DNA of 64,000 nt from Podarcis muralis (lineage: Eukaryota): NCBI RefSeq assembly GCF_964188315.1, contig NC_135666.1, positions 37,200,001-37,264,000 of the forward strand. Reading direction: 5' to 3'. The notes beneath the pieces were generated by a model. The model worked only from the letters and a program-made list of their open reading frames with translations. It was not told where the DNA came from and did not search any database. Made by a program: the position numbers and the translations under genes. Positions 10,701 through 45,749 of this stretch are shown here, piece after piece. Numbering within the stretch: the stretch's first letter is position 1; every line of letters starts with the position of its first letter.

Positions 10701-10915
10701 NNNNNNNNNNNNNNNNNNNNNNNNNNNNNNNNNNNNNNNNNNNNNNNNNNNNNNNNNNNNNNNNNNNNNNNNNNNNNNNNNNNNNNNNNNNNNNNNNNNN
10801 NNNNNNNNNNNNNNNNNNNNNNNNNNNNNNNNNNNNNNNNNNNNNNNNNNNNNNNNNNNNNNNNNNNNNNNNNNNNNNNNNNNNNNNNNNNNNNNNNNNN
10901 NNNNNNNNNNNNNNN
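10701..10915. other. Assembly gap (215 N)
   Basis: N run. Confidence 1.
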
Positions 10916-39475: not shown

Positions 39476-39539
39476 CTCGTATTGCGTGTCTCAACGTCCG
39501 CACCCATTCCCCAGCTTCCTTGGAAGTAGCAGCTGTGAA
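39476..39539 (-). CDS. SKAP2: SKAP2 coding exon (exon 8 equivalent), 64 bp: FTAATSKEAGEWVRTLRHAIR(D), C-terminal PH helix
   Basis: Aligns to recalled human FTAASPKDAEEWVQQLKFVLQD. Acceptor gaacag, donor GTGAGC, phase 0-1 keeps the frame. Confidence 0.95.
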
Positions 39540-39836
39540 CTGTTCAAAAAGTTGATTTTACTAGTAGGAATCATGAGCATAAAAATACAGCCAGCACGGT
39601 ATCAGGAATGAAAAGAAAGTAACATTCTTGTCACTTCTTCAAGGCACCATTAGCAATTCTTTACATGTCTTCTGGTACTTTTCTTGCAAGGATGCTTCTT
39701 ATAATGTACAGTTAATTTTGACAAATTTACGTAATTGAAGCAGAGGATGATGGATTTGGAACTCTGATCAGCAGCTGGCAGCTGTGCAGAAAAAAAAGCT
39801 GCTTCTCTTCATCAATGTCAAAAGCAGGACTGATGA

Positions 39837-40008
39837 NNNNNNNNNNNNNNNNNNNNNNNNNNNNNNNNNNNNNNNNNNNNNNNNNNNNNNNNNNNNNNNN
39901 NNNNNNNNNNNNNNNNNNNNNNNNNNNNNNNNNNNNNNNNNNNNNNNNNNNNNNNNNNNNNNNNNNNNNNNNNNNNNNNNNNNNNNNNNNNNNNNNNNNN
40001 NNNNNNNN
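39837..40008. other. Assembly gap (172 N)
   Basis: N run ~190 bp from the PLE cluster. Confidence 1.
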
Positions 40009-40115
40009 TGATGCCTAGCTGATAGATCTTGAATCACATAGCTGATATGTGCCTTTAACTTACATTTCCTTCCCCGTCCTCTAAGCAATACAAGATATGT
40101 TGAACATTTGGGGGT

Positions 40116-40146
40116 TTTATATATATATTAATATTATATTATATAT

Positions 40147-40195
<49 letters not shown>
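40116..40195. repeat. (AT)n-rich tract, left flank of the PLE cluster
   Basis: Visible TA run. Confidence 0.9.
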
Positions 40196-40197
<2 letters not shown>

Positions 40198-40274
40198 TTT
40201 CGTAGATTTTCACGGGTATAGGTATGCAGGTTTTGGTGTCCTCGGGTGTCTTCCCGTGTAAAAGTTGGGGTGTC

Positions 40275-40317
40275 TAGGCGACGTTTCGACGAGGTCTCAC
40301 TCGTCATCTTCAGGCTG
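40275..40317 (-). ncRNA. Minimal type-I hammerhead ribozyme motif, copy A (sense in SKAP2 pre-mRNA)
   Basis: Minus strand reads CAGC CUGAAGA U GACGAG-UGAGAC-CUCGUC GAAA CGUC GCCUA: core, 6-bp stem II, palindromic ACGU stem III, GUC triplet. Stem I is only 2-3 bp. Confidence 0.7.
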
Positions 40318-40370
40318 GTGCTTTCGGCTTCTTGTTACTGGAACAGAGCAGGATCTCAGTGTTTGAGTTC

Positions 40371-41549
40371 CTATAAATACTGTTGAGGGGTGTGGTGTAT
40401 AGCCTCCAATGTTCTGGGCCGAGAGGAAGTTCCCAGGCTAGTGTGCCTTTTCTTCTTTTGTTCCTTAGTTGCTTGAGGGATATCTTGAGTGATTTCTTGA
40501 GTGATATCCTGAGTACCACTTAGGTGGGTCATTAGGTGTGGATTAGTTGCTAAAGCCTTTGTGTCTTGACCTCTTGAACTTTGTGAAGAGTTTTTCTGAG
40601 AAGATGGCTGTAGTTGTGCTCTGGCTTGGCTTCGTGTATAGGGGCGAGCTGTGGTTTTGTGGCCTGTGCCAGCCAGATCTGTGTAGGGATTGCAGGGGGG
40701 TGCAGCATCCGGAGGTGCCACCATGGTTTGGCTACTGGATGGTGTCTGTAATTTATCTGTGGAGAGGGTCTGGGTTTGGGTCTGGTGTGGTTGATTGGTG
40801 ATGGCGTTCTGTGTGCCTCTGGATCTGGTGTCAGTTTTTGTGGGGAGGGCTAATTTCCAGATGTCTGGCAAGCGGGATGTGTCGTCACGCTTGTTCATGT
40901 TGTGAGGGTGTTTCTCTATCTCGATGGCTTCCATGATTATTCTCTTGTGGTGATGTTCCATGTTAGAGAGCAATTTGGAATCTGCAAAATTAATTTCGTG
41001 TCCTGTTTCTTTCATGTGTTGGAAAAGAGAGGAAGTTTTTTCTTCTTTTTTGACGGCATTCTTGTGTTCTGCGATACGTGCATTTATTCGTCTGTTTGTT
41101 TGTCCAATGTACGTGGCTGGGCAGACTTTGCAGGGTATTTCATAGACCCCTTGGTTTTCCAACTGGATTTTATCCTTGGGGTTTCTGAGGATATTGGCTA
41201 TCTTTTGGTTGGCGCAAAAGGCTGTTTTGATATTGTGTTTATGGAGGATTTTGCTAATTTTATCTGTAGTGCCCTTGATATAAGGAAGGAGGGCCATGCC
41301 ATTGTTTTCTTCTGTGTCTTGGTTTTTGGGGGGTGTTTCTTTTTGGATTAGCTTCGTAACCCTGTTTTGCTGGTATCCATTGGCAATTAACACATTTGAG
41401 AGATTCTGTAACTCAGTTGTCAAGTGGTCTTTGTCAGCCAGGCGTTTGGTTCTGGAGATGAGAGTCTTGGCTACGGAGTTTATTTGTGCAGGGTGGTGGT
41501 GTGATTGTGCATGTAAGTAGCGGTTGGTGTGTGTTTTTTTCCGGTAGAT
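40371..41549 (-). CDS. Partial PLE polyprotein (RT C-terminus, GIY-YIG endonuclease, 157-aa low-complexity tail); 5'-truncated, no genuine start
   Basis: Uninterrupted 392 codons; the 350-aa ORF in the track starts at an internal TTG. Confidence 0.85.
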   Translation of the reverse strand: MYRKKTHTNRYLHAQSHHHPAQINSVAKTLISRTKRLADKDHLTTELQNLSNVLIANGYQQNRVTKLIQKETPPKNQDTEENNGMALLPYIKGTTDKISKILHKHNIKTAFCANQKIANILRNPKDKIQLENQGVYEIPCKVCPATYIGQTNRRINARIAEHKNAVKKEEKTSSLFQHMKETGHEINFADSKLLSNMEHHHKRIIMEAIEIEKHPHNMNKRDDTSRLPDIWKLALPTKTDTRSRGTQNAITNQPHQTQTQTLSTDKLQTPSSSQTMVAPPDAAPPCNPYTDLAGTGHKTTARPYTRSQARAQLQPSSQKNSSQSSRGQDTKALATNPHLMTHLSGTQDITQEITQDIPQATKEQKKKRHTSLGTSSRPRTLEAIHHTPQQYL

Positions 41550-42735
41550 AGCAAAACAGGGTTACGAAGCTAATCCAAAAAATACCAGCAAAACAGGGTT
41601 ACGAAGCTAATCCAAAAAGAAACACCCCCCAAAAACCAAGACACAGAAGAAAACAATGGCATGGCCCTCCTTCCTTATATCAAGGGCACTACAGATAAAA
41701 TTAGCAAAATCCTCCATAAACACAATATCAAAACAGCCTTTTGCGCCAACCAAAAGATAGCCAATATCCTCAGAAACCCCAAGGATAAAATCCAGTTGGA
41801 AAACCAAGGGGTCTATGAAATACCCTGCAAAGTCTGCCCAGCCACGTACATTGGACAAACAAACAGACGAATAAATGCACGTATCGCAGAACACAAGAAT
41901 GCCGTCAAAAAAGAAGAAAAAACTTCCTCTCTTTTCCAACACATGAAAGAAACAGGACACGAAATTAATTTTGCAGATTCCAAATTGCTCTCTAACATGG
42001 AACATCACCACAAGAGAATAATCATGGAAGCCATCGAGATAGAGAAACACCCTCACAACATGAACAAGCGTGACGACACATCCCGCTTGCCAGACATCTG
42101 GAAATTAGCCCTCCCCACAAAAACTGACACCAGATCCAGAGGCACACAGAACGCCATCACCAATCAACCACACCAGACCCAAACCCAGACCCTCTCCACA
42201 GATAAATTACAGACACCATCCAGTAGCCAAACCATGATGGCACCTCCGGATGCTGCACCCCCCTGCAATCCCTACACAGATCTGGCTGGCACAGGCCACA
42301 AAACCACAGCTCGCCCCTATACACGAAGCCAAGCCAGAGCACAACTACAGCCATCTTCTCAGAAAAACTCTTCACAAAGTTCAAGAGGTCAAGACACAAA
42401 GGCTTTAGCAACTAATCCACACCTAATGACCCACCTAAGTGGTACTCAGGATATCACTCAAGAAATCACTCAAGATATCCCTCAAGCAACTAAGGAACAA
42501 AAGAAGAAAAGGCACACTAGCCTGGGAACTTCCTCTCGGCCCAGAACATTGGAGGCTATACACCACACCCCTCAACAGTATTTATAGGAACTCAAACACT
42601 GAGATCCTGCTCTGTTCCAGTAACAAGAAGCCGAAAGCACCAGCCTGAAGATGACGAGTGAGACCTCGTCGAAACGTCGCCTAGACACCCCAACTTTTAC
42701 ACGGGAAGACACCCGAGGACACCAAAACCTGCATA
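41550..42735 (+). mobile_element. Penelope-like element copy B (inverted relative to A; 32-bp 5' stutter; lacks last ~27 bp)
   Basis: 41582-42735 is the reverse complement of 40223-41376 (one mismatch, at 40721). ORF 41661..42587. Confidence 0.95.
42641..42683 (+). ncRNA. Minimal hammerhead ribozyme motif, copy B
   Basis: CTGAAGA 42645-51, stem II 42653-70, GAAA 42671-74, predicted cleavage after C42678. Confidence 0.7.
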
Positions 42736-42752
42736 TATATATATATATATAT

Positions 42753-43967
42753 TTGCTTTCGTAGATTTTCACGGGTATAGGTATGCAGGTTTTGGTGTCC
42801 TCGGGTGTCTTCCCGTGTAAAAGTTGGGGTGTCTAGGCGACGTTTCGACGAGGTCTCACTCGTCATCTTCAGGCTGGTGCTTTCGGCTTCTTGTTACTGG
42901 AACAGAGCAGGATCTCAGTGTTTGAGTTCCTATAAATACTGTTGAGGGGTGTGGTGTATAGCCTCCAATGTTCTGGGCCGAGAGGAAGTTCCCAGGCTAG
43001 TGTGCCTTTTCTTCTTTTGTTCCTTAGTTGCTTGAGGGATATCTTGAGTGATTTCTTGAGTGATATCCTGAGTACCACTTAGGTGGGTCATTAGGTGTGG
43101 ATTAGTTGCTAAAGCCTTTGTGTCTTGACCTCTTGAACTTTGTGAAGAGTTTTTCTGAGAAGATGGCTGTAGTTGTGCTCTGGCTTGGCTTCGTGTATAG
43201 GGGCGAGCTGTGGTTTTGTGGCCTGTGCCAGCCAGATCTGTGTAGGGATTGCAGGGGGGTGCAGCATCCGGAGGTGCCATCATGGTTTGGCTACTGGATG
43301 GTGTCTGTAATTTATCTGTGGAGAGGGTCTGGGTTTGGGTCTGGTGTGGTTGATTGGTGATGGCGTTCTGTGTGCCTCTGGATCTGGTGTCAGTTTTTGT
43401 GGGGAGGGCTAATTTCCAGATGTCTGGCAAGCGGGATGTGTCGTCACGCTTGTTCATGTTGTGAGGGTGTTTCTCTATCTCGATGGCTTCCATGATTATT
43501 CTCTTGTGGTGATGTTCCATGTTAGAGAGCAATTTGGAATCTGCAAAATTAATTTCGTGTCCTGTTTCTTTCATGTGTTGGAAAAGAGAGGAAGTTTTTT
43601 CTTCTTTTTTGACGGCATTCTTGTGTTCTGCGATACGTGCATTTATTCGTCTGTTTGTTTGTCCAATGTACGTGGCTGGGCAGACTTTGCAGGGTATTTC
43701 ATAGACCCCTTGGTTTTCCAACTGGATTTTATCCTTGGGGTTTCTGAGGATATTGGCTATCTTTTGGTTGGCGCAAAAGGCTGTTTTGATATTGTGTTTA
43801 TGGAGGATTTTGCTAATTTTATCTGTAGTGCCCTTGATATAAGGAAGGAGGGCCATGCCATTGTTTTCTTCTGTGTCTTGGTTTTTGGGGGGTGTTTCTT
43901 TTTGGATTAGCTTCGTAACCCTGTTTTGCTGGTATTTTTTGGATTAGCTTCGTAACCCTGTTTTGCT
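42753..43967 (-). mobile_element. Penelope-like element copy C (complete 3' end; short 5' end with 32-bp stutter)
   Basis: Direct repeat of copy A at offset 2559 up to 43935, followed by the flipped spacer. ORF 42930..43856. Confidence 0.95.
42834..42876 (-). ncRNA. Minimal hammerhead ribozyme motif, copy C (sense in SKAP2 pre-mRNA)
   Basis: Identical to copy A at +2559. Confidence 0.7.
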
Positions 43968-45146
43968 ATCTACCGGAAAAAAACACACACCAACCGCTAC
44001 TTACATGCACAATCACACCACCACCCTGCACAAATAAACTCCGTAGCCAAGACTCTCATCTCCAGAACCAAACGCCTGGCTGACAAAGACCACTTGACAA
44101 CTGAGTTACAGAATCTCTCAAATGTGTTAATTGCCAATGGATACCAGCAAAACAGGGTTACGAAGCTAATCCAAAAAGAAACACCCCCCAAAAACCAAGA
44201 CACAGAAGAAAACAATGGCATGGCCCTCCTTCCTTATATCAAGGGCACTACAGATAAAATTAGCAAAATCCTCCATAAACACAATATCAAAACAGCCTTT
44301 TGCGCCAACCAAAAGATAGCCAATATCCTCAGAAACCCCAAGGATAAAATCCAGTTGGAAAACCAAGGGGTCTATGAAATACCCTGCAAAGTCTGCCCAG
44401 CCACGTACATTGGACAAACAAACAGACGAATAAATGCACGTATCGCAGAACACAAGAATGCCGTCAAAAAAGAAGAAAAAACTTCCTCTCTTTTCCAACA
44501 CATGAAAGAAACAGGACACGAAATTAATTTTGCAGATTCCAAATTGCTCTCTAACATGGAACATCACCACAAGAGAATAATCATGGAAGCCATCGAGATA
44601 GAGAAACACCCTCACAACATGAACAAGCGTGACGACACATCCCGCTTGCCAGACATCTGGAAATTAGCCCTCCCCACAAAAACTGACACCAGATCCAGAG
44701 GCACACAGAACGCCATCACCAATCAACCACACCAGACCCAAACCCAGACCCTCTCCACAGATAAATTACAGACACCATCCAGTAGCCAAACCATGATGGC
44801 ACCTCCGGATGCTGCACCCCCCTGCAATCCCTACACAGATCTGGCTGGCACAGGCCACAAAACCACAGCTCGCCCCTATACACGAAGCCAAGCCAGAGCA
44901 CAACTACAGCCATCTTCTCAGAAAAACTCTTCACAAAGTTCAAGAGGTCAAGACACAAAGGCTTTAGCAACTAATCCACACCTAATGACCCACCTAAGTG
45001 GTACTCAGGATATCACTCAAGAAATCACTCAAGATATCCCTCAAGCAACTAAGGAACAAAAGAAGAAAAGGCACACTAGCCTGGGAACTTCCTCTCGGCC
45101 CAGAACATTGGAGGCTATACACCACACCCCTCAACAGTATTTATAG
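43968..45146 (+). CDS. Partial PLE polyprotein, copy D (differs from A at one codon, V/M)
   Basis: Uninterrupted 392 codons, IYRKKTHTNRYL...PQQYL*. Confidence 0.85.
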   Translation: MYRKKTHTNRYLHAQSHHHPAQINSVAKTLISRTKRLADKDHLTTELQNLSNVLIANGYQQNRVTKLIQKETPPKNQDTEENNGMALLPYIKGTTDKISKILHKHNIKTAFCANQKIANILRNPKDKIQLENQGVYEIPCKVCPATYIGQTNRRINARIAEHKNAVKKEEKTSSLFQHMKETGHEINFADSKLLSNMEHHHKRIIMEAIEIEKHPHNMNKRDDTSRLPDIWKLALPTKTDTRSRGTQNAITNQPHQTQTQTLSTDKLQTPSSSQTMMAPPDAAPPCNPYTDLAGTGHKTTARPYTRSQARAQLQPSSQKNSSQSSRGQDTKALATNPHLMTHLSGTQDITQEITQDIPQATKEQKKKRHTSLGTSSRPRTLEAIHHTPQQYL

Positions 45147-45199
45147 GAACTCAAACACTGAGATCCTGCTCTGTTCCAGTAACAAGAAGCCGAAAGCAC

Positions 45200-45242
45200 C
45201 AGCCTGAAGATGACGAGTGAGACCTCGTCGAAACGTCGCCTA
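45200..45242 (+). ncRNA. Minimal hammerhead ribozyme motif, copy D
   Basis: Identical to copy B at +2559. Confidence 0.7.
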
Positions 45243-45291
45243 GACACCCCAACTTTTACACGGGAAGACACCCGAGGACACCAAAACCTGC

Positions 45292-45333
<42 letters not shown>
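45292..45333. repeat. (AT)n(AC)n microsatellite, right flank of the PLE cluster
   Basis: Visible run. Confidence 0.9.
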
Positions 45334-45334
<1 letters not shown>

Positions 45335-45624
45335 TTATTATTCATCCAAGAGCAGACCTATTAGATAATAGATATTTAAATATAAGCTGTGAAATGGAAC
45401 AGCAGATAAAAATGGTATATTGGTTGTTCTTATCCAAAAAGATAGTATAATGTTTAATCTATTCATATACATATATATATGAATGAATGTACAAGGTAAG
45501 CGAATCAAGAGTTACTTTTCCTTGAACATGTCAGGAGTTGTTTTATTGAAATGTTAATGTCTTCATAACTGGAACAGTAACAGTTTTTATCAATTTAATT
45601 TCAAGATGACATAGGAAGTCCAAC

Positions 45625-45749
45625 CTGATAAATGCGTTTATCAGGAGCAGCGATTTCAAAACAGCAATCTTTCTTTCCATCCTTCCGAAGGGTATTATTC
45701 ATTCTGACGGTGTAGCCATCTATAGCAAATTCACCTTTCTGTTGTTTGT
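45625..45749 (-). CDS. SKAP2: SKAP2 coding exon (exon 7 equivalent), 125 bp: DKQQKGEFAIDGYTVRMNNTLRKDGKKDCCFEIAAPDKRIYQ
   Basis: Contained in ORF 45601..45789. Diagnostic SKAP2 PH-domain sequence. Acceptor cgacag, weak donor GTTGGA, phase 1-0. Confidence 0.98.

What the first reader, a model, noticed from the sequence alone, without database searches (positions are those of the whole stretch)
40196..45294. 5-kb palindrome of palindromes built from four Penelope-like element ends inside SKAP2 intron 7
Seen: arms 40223-41376, 41582-42735, 42782-43935 and 44141-45294 (1154 bp each, orientation -,+,-,+). 40223-42735 is the reverse complement of 42782-45294 (2513-bp arms, 46-bp centre, one mismatch noticed), and each half is itself an inverted repeat around a 205-bp spacer. 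The cluster is ~84% of the 6085-bp intron. Known: PLEs often insert as partial tandem or inverted arrays, and long perfect palindromes are unstable and form cruciforms and dsRNA. Inference: a very recent product of repeated fold-back cDNA synthesis (hairpin-type replication) fixed in a host gene. An assembly or chimeric-read artefact is a serious alternative.
Basis: partly seen in the sequence, partly recalled or inferred. Interest (0 to 1): 0.88.

Follow-up and report, generated by a model that had tools for sequence, protein, structure and literature searches.

The report
Doubled head-to-head Penelope insertion in SKAP2
A wall-lizard SKAP2 intron holds a very young 5.1-kb block of four Penelope-retrotransposon tails: each 2.5-kb half is an ordinary product of the element copying itself onto both DNA strands, and the doubling more likely arose later at the DNA level than by repeated fold-back copying.

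Summary
There are four 1154-nt perfect arms (-,+,-,+), a 2513-nt outer palindrome with one internal mismatch (40721), and a 6085-bp SKAP2 intron.

The block is not a true mirror. A 27-nt stretch precedes both minus arms in direct orientation, giving an exact 2559-bp tandem period. Only the 205-nt asymmetric core is flipped in unit 2.

Each unit is a standard Penelope-like element (PLE) double insertion in a (TA)n tract. It consists of two 5'-truncated copies, 1329 and 1154 nt, with 3' ends facing outward. One copy carries the known optional "tail". The two 3' ends lie 85 and 112 nt into the next ORF, which resembles the two reverse-transcription start sites shown in vitro for the Anolis element.

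Podarcis raffonei and P. lilfordi have an uninterrupted (AT)n at this site, so the insertion is specific to the P. muralis lineage.

The nearby N-run is a mask, not a gap. It is 172 nt, and exactly 172 nt separate the matching flanks in both relatives.

Tail orientation contradicts fold-back cDNA synthesis. My best reading (0.45) is two-strand target-primed insertion, then tandem duplication through the flanking (TA)n with a template-switch or recombination flip. The rivals are re-mobilisation of a whole hairpin unit (0.2) and an assembly artefact (0.1). No spanning reads could be examined.

The scan had already noted this flip, and many simple head-to-head PLE pairs elsewhere in this genome.

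The parts
40118..40195 (.). Left part of the target (AT)n microsatellite
   Evidence: TRF. It is continuous with the right part in P. raffonei and P. lilfordi.
40196..40222 (-). 27-nt PLE 'tail' attached to the 3' end of arm 1 (distal reverse-transcription start)
   Evidence: It is multi-copy in four P. muralis runs. Depth over the identical copy at 42765-42778 is 630-1200 in X2, where contigs judged single-copy have depth about 10. It matches the optional tail described in PMC8557442 and PMC11167929.
40223..41551 (-). Unit 1, long 5'-truncated PLE copy (1329 nt): RT C-terminus, GIY-YIG nuclease, hammerhead-like motif, first 85 nt of the next ORF
   Evidence: Full-length family copies continue past 41551 (loose ends; L001).
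41550..41581 (+). Inner junction J: a 32-nt sense segment that repeats 41587-41618, joined to the long copy through a 2-nt microhomology (AG)
   Evidence: This is a template-switch signature, and it is identical (as reverse complement) at 43936-43967.
41582..42735 (+). Unit 1, short 5'-truncated PLE copy (1154 nt) ending at the canonical proximal 3' end ..CCTGCATA
   Evidence: Other family copies end at this point, followed by (TA)n (loose ends at 40223 and 42782; L001).
42734..42754 (.). Centre: (TA)9 followed by TTT
   Evidence: It differs from the left junction by one base (A at 40194, T at 42753).
42755..42781 (-). Second copy of the 27-nt tail, in direct (not mirrored) orientation
42782..43935 (-). 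Unit 2, short copy
43936..43967 (-). Junction J in reverse complement
43966..45294 (+). Unit 2, long copy, ending at the proximal 3' end without a tail
45292..45334 (.). Right part of the target microsatellite, (TA)10 then (CA)12
   Evidence: TRF.
40721..40721 (.). The only difference between arms. Arm 1 has sense G (Val), which is the family state. Arms 2-4 share the derived A (Met).
   Evidence: No alternative reaching 10% of depth is listed at this place among family contigs.
42645..42675 (+). Hammerhead-like core (CUGAAGA, 6-bp helix II, GAAAC, then GUC), with the next ORF's ATG at 42651. The same motif is at 40283-40313(-), 42842-42872(-) and 45204-45234(+).
   Evidence: No Rfam hammerhead model reports it.
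45625..45749 (-). SKAP2 exon upstream of the intron (..KQQKGEFAIDGY..DKRIYQ)
39476..39539 (-). SKAP2 exon downstream of the intron (FTAATSKEAGEWV..)

Best explanation
This is a real, very young insertion specific to the P. muralis lineage. Step 1 is shown by anatomy and fits published biochemistry. A Poseidon-type Penelope-like element inserted into an (AT)n tract of the SKAP2 intron by target-primed reverse transcription on both DNA strands. The top-strand cDNA started at the distal start site, so it carries the 27-nt tail, and it reached 1329 nt. The bottom-strand cDNA started at the proximal site, so it has no tail, and it reached 1154 nt. The two 3' ends were joined by template switching, leaving a 2-nt microhomology and a 32-nt duplication. 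The result is one 2.5-kb head-to-head unit whose 'spacer' is simply the extra 5' part of the longer copy. Step 2 is inferred. The unit, together with its tail, was duplicated in tandem at the DNA level through the (TA)n tracts on both sides, by slippage, unequal exchange or break-induced copying. While or after the second copy was made, two strand switches or a crossover between the identical inverted arms turned its 205-nt core around. The host pre-mRNA (minus strand) now carries a nested hairpin with 1.15-kb and 2.5-kb stems.
For: Identity of the unit: the arms encode a GIY-YIG domain with CxxC..HxxxxH and an RT C-terminus. Homologues are PLE proteins carrying PF00078, PF26215 and PF01541.

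Canonical end and tail: both are seen in other family copies. The ends lie 85 and 112 nt after the next ORF's ATG. In the Anolis PLE, reverse transcription starts 111-118 nt into the ORF at two adjacent sites, the tail is the stretch between them, and both strands are cut and extended (PMC11167929). Inverted 5'-truncated neighbours, a tail at one end only and a (TA)n target preference are known PLE traits (PMC8557442).

Empty sites: (AT)25 in P. raffonei and (AT)10 in P. lilfordi, with flanks 97-98% identical to the window.

DNA-level doubling: there is an exact 2559-bp direct period that includes the tail. Both sides of the centre look like genuine element-end/(TA)n junctions. The inner junction J is identical in both units, so one unit was copied from the other.

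Flip: the SNP pattern is G/A in the unflipped unit and A/A in the flipped unit. That is what two strand switches inside the arms, or a crossover with a conversion tract, would leave. Spacer inversion by recombination or template switching between palindrome arms is well documented (PMC8327919; PMC8604942).

Against an artefact: the N-run at 39837-40008 corresponds to exactly 172 nt in both relatives, so it is a mask and not a gap. Whichever P. muralis assembly the window comes from, PodMur1.0 was built from PacBio reads of at least 8 kb. I believe the newer record, GCA_964188315.1, is also long-read, but that is from memory and unchecked.
Against: No read spanning the block, or even the central junction, could be examined. 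The tool masked 42660-42763, and k=31 contigs cannot resolve unit number or core orientation. The scenario needs a duplication and a flip within a time that left only two substitutions (40721 and 42753). The (TA)n tracts offer only about 20-46 bp of homology. Which P. muralis assembly the window comes from was not established. Population frequency is unknown.
Confidence: 0.45

Rival explanations
1. Second-generation two-strand insertion. The template RNA was a read-through transcript of a pre-existing head-to-head unit at a master locus elsewhere (tail', short(-), J', long(+), continuing into more PLE sequence). Two cDNAs of this hairpin RNA were primed on the two strands of the SKAP2 (TA)n site. 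One started at the distal site and stopped about 27 nt short of the RNA's 5' end. The other started at the proximal site and copied through the 5' tail into (UA)n. Their 3' ends joined through TA microhomology. One event would then give all four arms, the flipped core, the single outer tail and the central tail, with the same anatomy as a simple unit one level up.
For: It reproduces every feature with one event plus one substitution. Both-strand extension and two start sites are documented. The TTT next to the central tail, against TAT at the left, is natural if the central tail comes from another locus.
Against: Arm 2 ends exactly at the canonical proximal 3' end. Under this model that is a coincidence, helped only by TA microhomology. 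Inserted copies lack the region downstream of the start sites that the Anolis protein needs (to +172), so a special master is required. The reverse transcriptase would have to cross a 1.15-kb perfect RNA hairpin twice. The arm length in the other note (1110 nt) implies a different junction. The look-up by sequence was blank.
Confidence: 0.2
2. Assembly artefact. The animal carries one unit (perhaps in both core orientations), and the assembler walked the cycle (TA)n - tail - arm - core - arm - (TA)n twice. In a k-mer graph, core orientation is ambiguous and (TA)n is its own reverse complement.
For: PLE tandem/inverted structures are said to cause problems in shotgun assemblies (PMC8557442). 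No spanning read was seen. All parts between the units are multi-copy or low-complexity. A flipped core is what an ambiguous graph walk would give.
Against: There is no gap nearby, because the N-run is a length-exact mask. A family with thousands of near-identical copies could not be resolved into 5 kb of gap-free sequence from short reads. PodMur1.0 used reads of at least 8 kb with overlap-based assembly, where a 20-bp (TA)n overlap cannot create a join. A missed-adapter palindromic read predicts a mirrored tail, which is not seen. All four arms keep a minority variant of the family (G at 42538), so they are not a majority-path consensus.
Confidence: 0.1
3. One reading: repeated fold-back (snap-back) cDNA synthesis. 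The first cDNA folds back to prime its own complement, and the product folds back again at (TA)n.
For: (TA)n is self-complementary. The outer 2513-nt arms are mirror images with one mismatch. The core of one unit is continuous with one arm, as a hairpin loop would be.
Against: [quoted passage not shown] Arm 2 should then carry the tail of arm 1, and the block should end with a mirrored tail after arm 4. Neither is present, and the tail stands in direct orientation before arm 3. Inversions between arms cannot move a tail that lies outside the arms.
Confidence: 0.05

Closest known systems
Canonical endonuclease-positive Penelope-like elements of the Penelope/Poseidon type, e.g. PAc of Anolis carolinensis (PMC11167929; PMC8557442)
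   Same: C-terminal GIY-YIG nuclease with a CCHH motif. The next ORF's ATG lies inside the hammerhead-like motif. The 3' ends fall at two adjacent sites (+85 and +112 here; 111-118 in PAc). There is an optional tail at one end, an AT-rich/(TA)n target, 5' truncation and an adjacent inverted copy.
   Different: Only the last 1.15-1.33 kb of the element is present, with no pLTR-ORF-pLTR tandem. The head-to-head pair is itself present twice, with its core flipped. I found no description of that arrangement, although 'complex tandem/inverted insertions' are mentioned in general terms.
Large genomic palindromes with spacer flip by arm-to-arm recombination (primate X and Y palindromes, PMC8327919) and spacer inversion by template switching between inverted repeats (PMC8604942)
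   Same: Near-identical inverted arms, an asymmetric spacer found in both orientations, and homogenised arms.
   Different: The arms here are about 1.2 kb of retrotransposon rather than tens of kb of gene-bearing amplicon. The two orientations sit side by side in one haplotype.
L1 twin priming (inversion/truncation products); from my own knowledge, not checked here
   Same: Two priming events at one target give inverted retroelement segments joined by microhomology.
   Different: Twin priming uses one RNA and gives non-overlapping 5' and 3' parts. Here both arms hold the same 3' region, which implies two templates or two passes and priming on both strands.
Tandem arrays derived from PLE termini (non-LTR retrozymes; bioRxiv 10.64898/2026.07.22.740005)
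   Same: Local tandem amplification of PLE terminal sequence carrying hammerhead motifs.
   Different: Retrozyme units are short and head-to-tail. This unit is a 2.56-kb inverted pair, present only twice.

Membership tests
Penelope-like element (endonuclease-positive, Penelope/Poseidon type) | C-terminal GIY-YIG endonuclease with a CCHH zinc-finger-like motif | tested here: met
   Pfam PF01541 scores E 2.5e-4 to 3.4e-4 at 21.3-21.7 bits, just under the 22.6-bit cut-off. GVYEIPCKVC..YIGQT..R..EH and FQHMKETGH are visible in the translation. Homologues carry PF01541.
Penelope-like element (endonuclease-positive, Penelope/Poseidon type) | PLE-type reverse transcriptase upstream of the nuclease | tested here: inconclusive
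   The copies are 5'-truncated. Only the last approximately 45 residues before the linker remain (IYRKKTHTNRYL..). The closest database proteins carry PF00078 plus PF26215. Family copies continue upstream.
Penelope-like element (endonuclease-positive, Penelope/Poseidon type) | Hammerhead ribozyme motif in the pLTR/ORF-start region | tested here: inconclusive
   The core CUGAAGA, a 6-bp helix II, GAAAC and GUC are present in all four arms, with the ATG at the start of helix II as in PAc. No Rfam hammerhead model reports it, even on a 136-nt stretch. Cleavage was not tested.
Penelope-like element (endonuclease-positive, Penelope/Poseidon type) | [quoted passage not shown] | tested here: met
   A 27-nt tail is present on arms 1 and 3 only. 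It is multi-copy in the genome. The ends are at ATG+85 and ATG+112, compared with 111-118 in PAc.
Penelope-like element (endonuclease-positive, Penelope/Poseidon type) | Insertion into AT-rich/(TA)n DNA, 5' truncation, adjacent inverted copy | tested here: met
   Two congeners have empty (AT)n sites. The truncation points are 41551 and 41582. The orientation is head-to-head.
Fold-back (snap-back) palindrome | Complete mirror symmetry of everything copied, terminal extensions included | tested here: not met
   The tail is repeated in direct orientation (40196-40222 and 42755-42781). Arms 2 and 4 have no tail.
Simple tandem duplication | Two head-to-tail copies identical along the whole unit | tested here: not met
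   The period is 2559 bp, but the 205-nt core is inverted in unit 2. A further step (the flip) is required.
Assembly artefact | No independent read support for the junctions, or adjacency to a gap | not testable with these tools
   Gap adjacency was tested and not met, since the N-run is a 172-nt mask. Read support could not be judged: only k=31 contigs were available, the centre was masked by the tool, and both read-laying runs were used.

The most novel reading that the evidence does not exclude
The four-arm block was made in one retrotransposition event. A transcript of a whole head-to-head PLE pair (a 2.5-kb hairpin RNA) served as template for cDNA synthesis on both strands of the target. 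PLE palindromes would then be able to breed palindromes of palindromes, meaning that composite inverted units are themselves mobile.
Probability: 0.2. Interest if true: 0.6.

Novelty: new member of a known kind. Interest (0 to 1): 0.4.

Why it matters
This locus is a clean natural record of the unusual PLE insertion mechanism that has so far been shown only in vitro for one Anolis element. The sequence preserves both target strands used as primers, the two start sites 27 nt apart, a tail on one side only, and a microhomology/template-switch joint. Empty sites in two sister species fix the target. The doubled form with a flipped core shows what a perfect 1.2-kb inverted repeat flanked by (TA)n does next. 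If the flip and the copy number vary among wall lizards, the locus could be used to measure inverted-repeat toggling and palindrome stability in a vertebrate. It also places a nested hairpin of up to 2.5 kb in the SKAP2 pre-mRNA, which could affect splicing, RNA editing or small-RNA production. None of these effects was tested.

Tried and rejected
1. Rfam scans gave only false miRNA-type hits caused by the palindrome. No hammerhead model matched.

2. Read laying on the whole block and on the centre were not decisive. The runs are k=31 contigs, the family is present at thousands-fold depth, the tool masked 42660-42763, and neither unit number nor core orientation can be read. The zero depth on 40010-40115 is best explained by the filter that drops contigs matching human DNA, because the neighbouring N-run hides a conserved element. 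It is not evidence of a bad flank.

3. I first took the 27 nt before arms 1 and 3 for host sequence. I rejected this because its depth is 60-120 times the depth of contigs judged single-copy and it matches the known PLE tail.

4. I first counted the N-run 200 bp upstream as a sign of misassembly. I rejected this after both relatives showed exactly 172 nt at that place. I did not print or read those letters.

5. Exact look-ups of the 308-aa PLE ORF and of the older P. muralis SKAP2 protein found nothing. The P. muralis SKAP2 locus on record spans 104.5 kb, so no DNA was returned.

6. There are no copies of this PLE family in the 100-kb SKAP2 loci of P. raffonei or P. lilfordi, so no comparison of architecture was possible there.

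7. I considered models of origin-dependent inverted-repeat amplification and DUP-TRP/INV-DUP. Both predict a mirrored tail or a triplication, and neither is present.

8. The look-up of earlier findings by sequence with junction J was blank.
Full report
**1. Observation**

- Four arms in the order -,+,-,+ have perfect cores at 40223-41376, 41582-42735, 42782-43935 and 44141-45294 (1154 nt each).
- An outer palindrome, 40223-42735 against 42782-45294, surrounds a 46-nt centre.
- There is one internal mismatch, at 40721.
- The block lies in a 6085-bp intron (39540-45624) of a gene on the minus strand.
- The gene is SKAP2. The exon at 45625-45747 matches 40 of 41 residues of the solved SKAP2 PH domain, and the window's exons match P. 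muralis XP_028606080.2.
- A 316-nt stretch across the centre folds as an almost perfect DNA hairpin (z = -42). Chance is not an issue.

**2.

The block also has an exact direct period of 2559 bp (40174-40473 = 42733-43032). A 27-nt stretch (40196-40222) stands before arm 1. The same 27 nt (42755-42781) stand before arm 3, in the same orientation. Nothing corresponding follows arm 4. Arms 2 and 4 run straight from ..CCTGCATA into (TA)n.

The block is therefore two tandem copies of a unit [tail - arm(-) - core - arm(+) - (TA)n], in which only the 205-nt core is turned around in the second copy.

**3. What a unit is**

*Coding content.*
- The arms encode the end of a reverse transcriptase (..IYRKKTHTNRYL..), a linker and a GIY-YIG nuclease with the CxxC..HxxxxH motif.
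- Database relatives are PLE proteins of squamates and insects carrying PF00078, PF26215 and PF01541.

*The spacer.* The 'spacer' is not foreign DNA. It is the continuation of one copy.
- In unit 1 the minus copy runs from 40223 to 41551 (1329 nt), and the plus copy from 41582 to 42735 (1154 nt).
- Between them lies a 32-nt sense segment (41550-41581) that repeats 41587-41618. It shares 2 nt (AG) with the end of the long copy. That is a template-switch joint.
- Full-length family members read on past 41551 (loose ends; contig L001).

*Family and ends.*
- The family is present at thousands-fold depth in P. muralis runs.
- Most copies end at ..CCTGCATA followed by (TA)n.
- A minority run 27 nt further. 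Depth over the tail is 630-1200 in run X2, where contigs judged single-copy have depth about 10. The 27 nt are therefore part of the element and not host DNA.

**4. Fit to known PLE biology**

Craig et al. 2021 (PMC8557442) list, for PLEs:
- 5' truncation;
- an adjacent inverted 5'-truncated copy;
- a 30-40-bp tail, often at only one end;
- a (TA)n target preference.

Frangieh et al. 2024 (PMC11167929) showed for the Anolis element that:
- the protein cuts and extends both strands;
- reverse transcription starts at two adjacent internal sites, in an AC-rich stem-loop 111-118 nt into the ORF;
- the tail is the stretch between those two sites.

Here the next ORF's ATG (42651) lies inside the hammerhead-like motif, as in the Anolis element. 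The two 3' ends lie 85 and 112 nt after that ATG. The tail's CCCGUGAAAA pairs with an upstream UUUUACACGGG around an AC-rich loop.

A unit is therefore what two-strand target-primed reverse transcription should leave. One cDNA starts at the distal site and the other at the proximal site, and they are joined in the middle.

According to unverified notes of this scan, such pairs inside (TA)n are common in this genome.

**5. Target and age**

I reached the orthologous intron in two relatives through a chain of look-ups: SKAP2 exon, then protein representatives, SKAP2 clusters, lacertid members, and finally the loci.
- P. raffonei (GCA_027172205.1) has an uninterrupted (AT)25 at the site.
- P. lilfordi (GCA_947686815.1) has (AT)10.
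- The flanks are 97-98% identical to the window, and no tail, element end or junction word is present.

The insertion therefore arose in the P. muralis lineage. Among the four arms there is one difference in 4 x 1154 nt, whereas another family copy differs by about 3% (40 of 1354). All four arms share a minority family variant (G at 42538), so they come from one source.

**6. Real or artefact**

The N-run at 39837-40008 looked like a gap next to the block. In both relatives the matching flanks are separated by exactly 172 nt, which is the length of the N-run. It is therefore a mask over a conserved element, as earlier notes suggested. I did not read those letters. This also explains the zero depth on 40010-40115, because contigs reaching a human-like element are filtered out.

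Several points argue against an artefact.
- A 5-kb gap-free block of a thousands-copy repeat cannot come from a short-read assembly.
- PodMur1.0 was built from about 100x PacBio reads of at least 8 kb with an overlap assembler (10.1101/481895).
- The newer record GCA_964188315.1 is, as far as I know, also long-read. That is from memory and unchecked.
- A 20-bp (TA)n overlap cannot make a false join in such assemblers.
- A missed-adapter palindromic read predicts a mirrored tail, which is absent.

Even so, I saw no spanning read. Both read-laying runs gave only k=31 contigs, and the centre was masked by the tool. I put the artefact at about 0.1.

**7. How the doubling arose**

It should be mirrored after arm 4, and arm 2 should carry arm 1's tail. 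Neither is seen.

*DNA-level route.* This explains everything.
- The unit sits between two (TA)n tracts, and its own hairpin can bring them together. Slippage, unequal exchange or break-induced copying then gives a tandem copy that includes the tail.
- Both sides of the centre look like genuine element-end/(TA)n junctions, as this route predicts.
- The flip follows from a crossover or two strand switches between the identical inverted arms. This behaviour is documented for palindromes (PMC8327919; PMC8604942).
- The single SNP fits. At 40721 arm 1 keeps the family base (sense G), and arms 2-4 share the derived A. The unflipped unit is therefore G/A and the flipped unit A/A.
- If the second unit was copied with one switch in the outer 504 nt of arm 3 and a switch back in the inner 662 nt of arm 4, it gets a flipped core and A/A in a single event.
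- The one-base difference beside the central tail (TTT against TAT) needs one more substitution.

*Alternative route.* The template may have been a transcript of a whole head-to-head unit from a master locus, copied on both strands. This gives the entire block in one event and mirrors the anatomy of a simple unit one level up.
- It predicts junction J at other loci. I could not test that. The look-up by sequence was blank, and note s1-173032 (190-bp spacer, 1110-bp arms) is only a lead.
- It requires arm 2 to stop by coincidence exactly at the canonical proximal end.
- It needs a master that retains the region required for protein binding (to +172 in Anolis).

My weights are: DNA-level duplication with flip 0.45, composite-unit re-mobilisation 0.2, artefact 0.1, fold-back 0.05, and the remainder unassigned.

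**8. Verdict**

The identity as PLE ends, and their youth, are confirmed. The proposed mechanism is not supported.

The units are ordinary PLE products and make a neat natural counterpart to the in vitro work. The doubled, half-flipped arrangement is an unusual but explicable secondary structure. Interest is moderate (0.4). It would rise if the composite unit proves mobile or if the locus toggles between forms in populations.

Noticed in passing
window 39837-40008 (also 10701-10915 and 18535-18738): The N-run beside the block corresponds to exactly 172 nt in both P. raffonei and P. lilfordi. It is a mask over an indel-free conserved element and not an assembly gap. SKAP2 introns are known (from my own knowledge) to hold conserved HOXA-region enhancers. 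The letters were not read.
   Followed up: partly
window 42585-42762; same in the other three arms: The main PLE ORF stops at 42585-42587. The next ORF's ATG (42651) sits inside the hammerhead-like motif (CUGAAG-AUG-ACGAG). The insertion ends 85 or 112 nt into that ORF (MTSETSSKRRLDTPTF..). This is the same layout as the Anolis Poseidon element.
   Followed up: yes
window 40472-40514, 42444-42486, 43031-43073, 45003-45045: A 12-nt tandem repeat (about 3.6 copies) lies inside the low-complexity C-terminal extension of the PLE ORF (..TQDITQEITQDIPQ..).
   Followed up: no
window 45312-45334 against L002 about 58190 and L003 about 59040: (CA)12 next to the target (TA)n exists only in P. muralis. 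The relatives have ..TTTACATTATT.. there, so the compound microsatellite grew after the split. The (AT)n length also differs strongly among the three species: 25 repeats in P. raffonei, 10 in P. lilfordi, and about 23 + 9 + 10 in P. muralis.
   Followed up: partly
L001:1-80 (Logan contig of ERR14657285): Another copy of the family (97% identical) is preceded by sequence resembling the tail (..GTGAATCTACGAAAAACC..), joined directly to the RT C-terminal region. It may be an internally deleted, non-autonomous derivative.
   Followed up: no
runs X10-X20 (organisms B-G): Runs labelled as several other organisms hold 64-70% of the 31-mers of this block. The PLE subfamily is therefore near-identical across several species, presumably other Podarcis: either very recent activity or exchange between species.
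   Followed up: no
window 42648-42869: Rfam miRNA-precursor models (MIR7723, MIR537, mir-358 and others) score E down to 4e-22 on the central hairpin. These are false hits caused by the palindrome, and all are below their gathering scores.
   Followed up: yes
The spacer is nearly the same size as here (191 nt by the repeat finder). This could be chance, a preferred switch distance, or a sister copy of the same composite unit.
   Followed up: no
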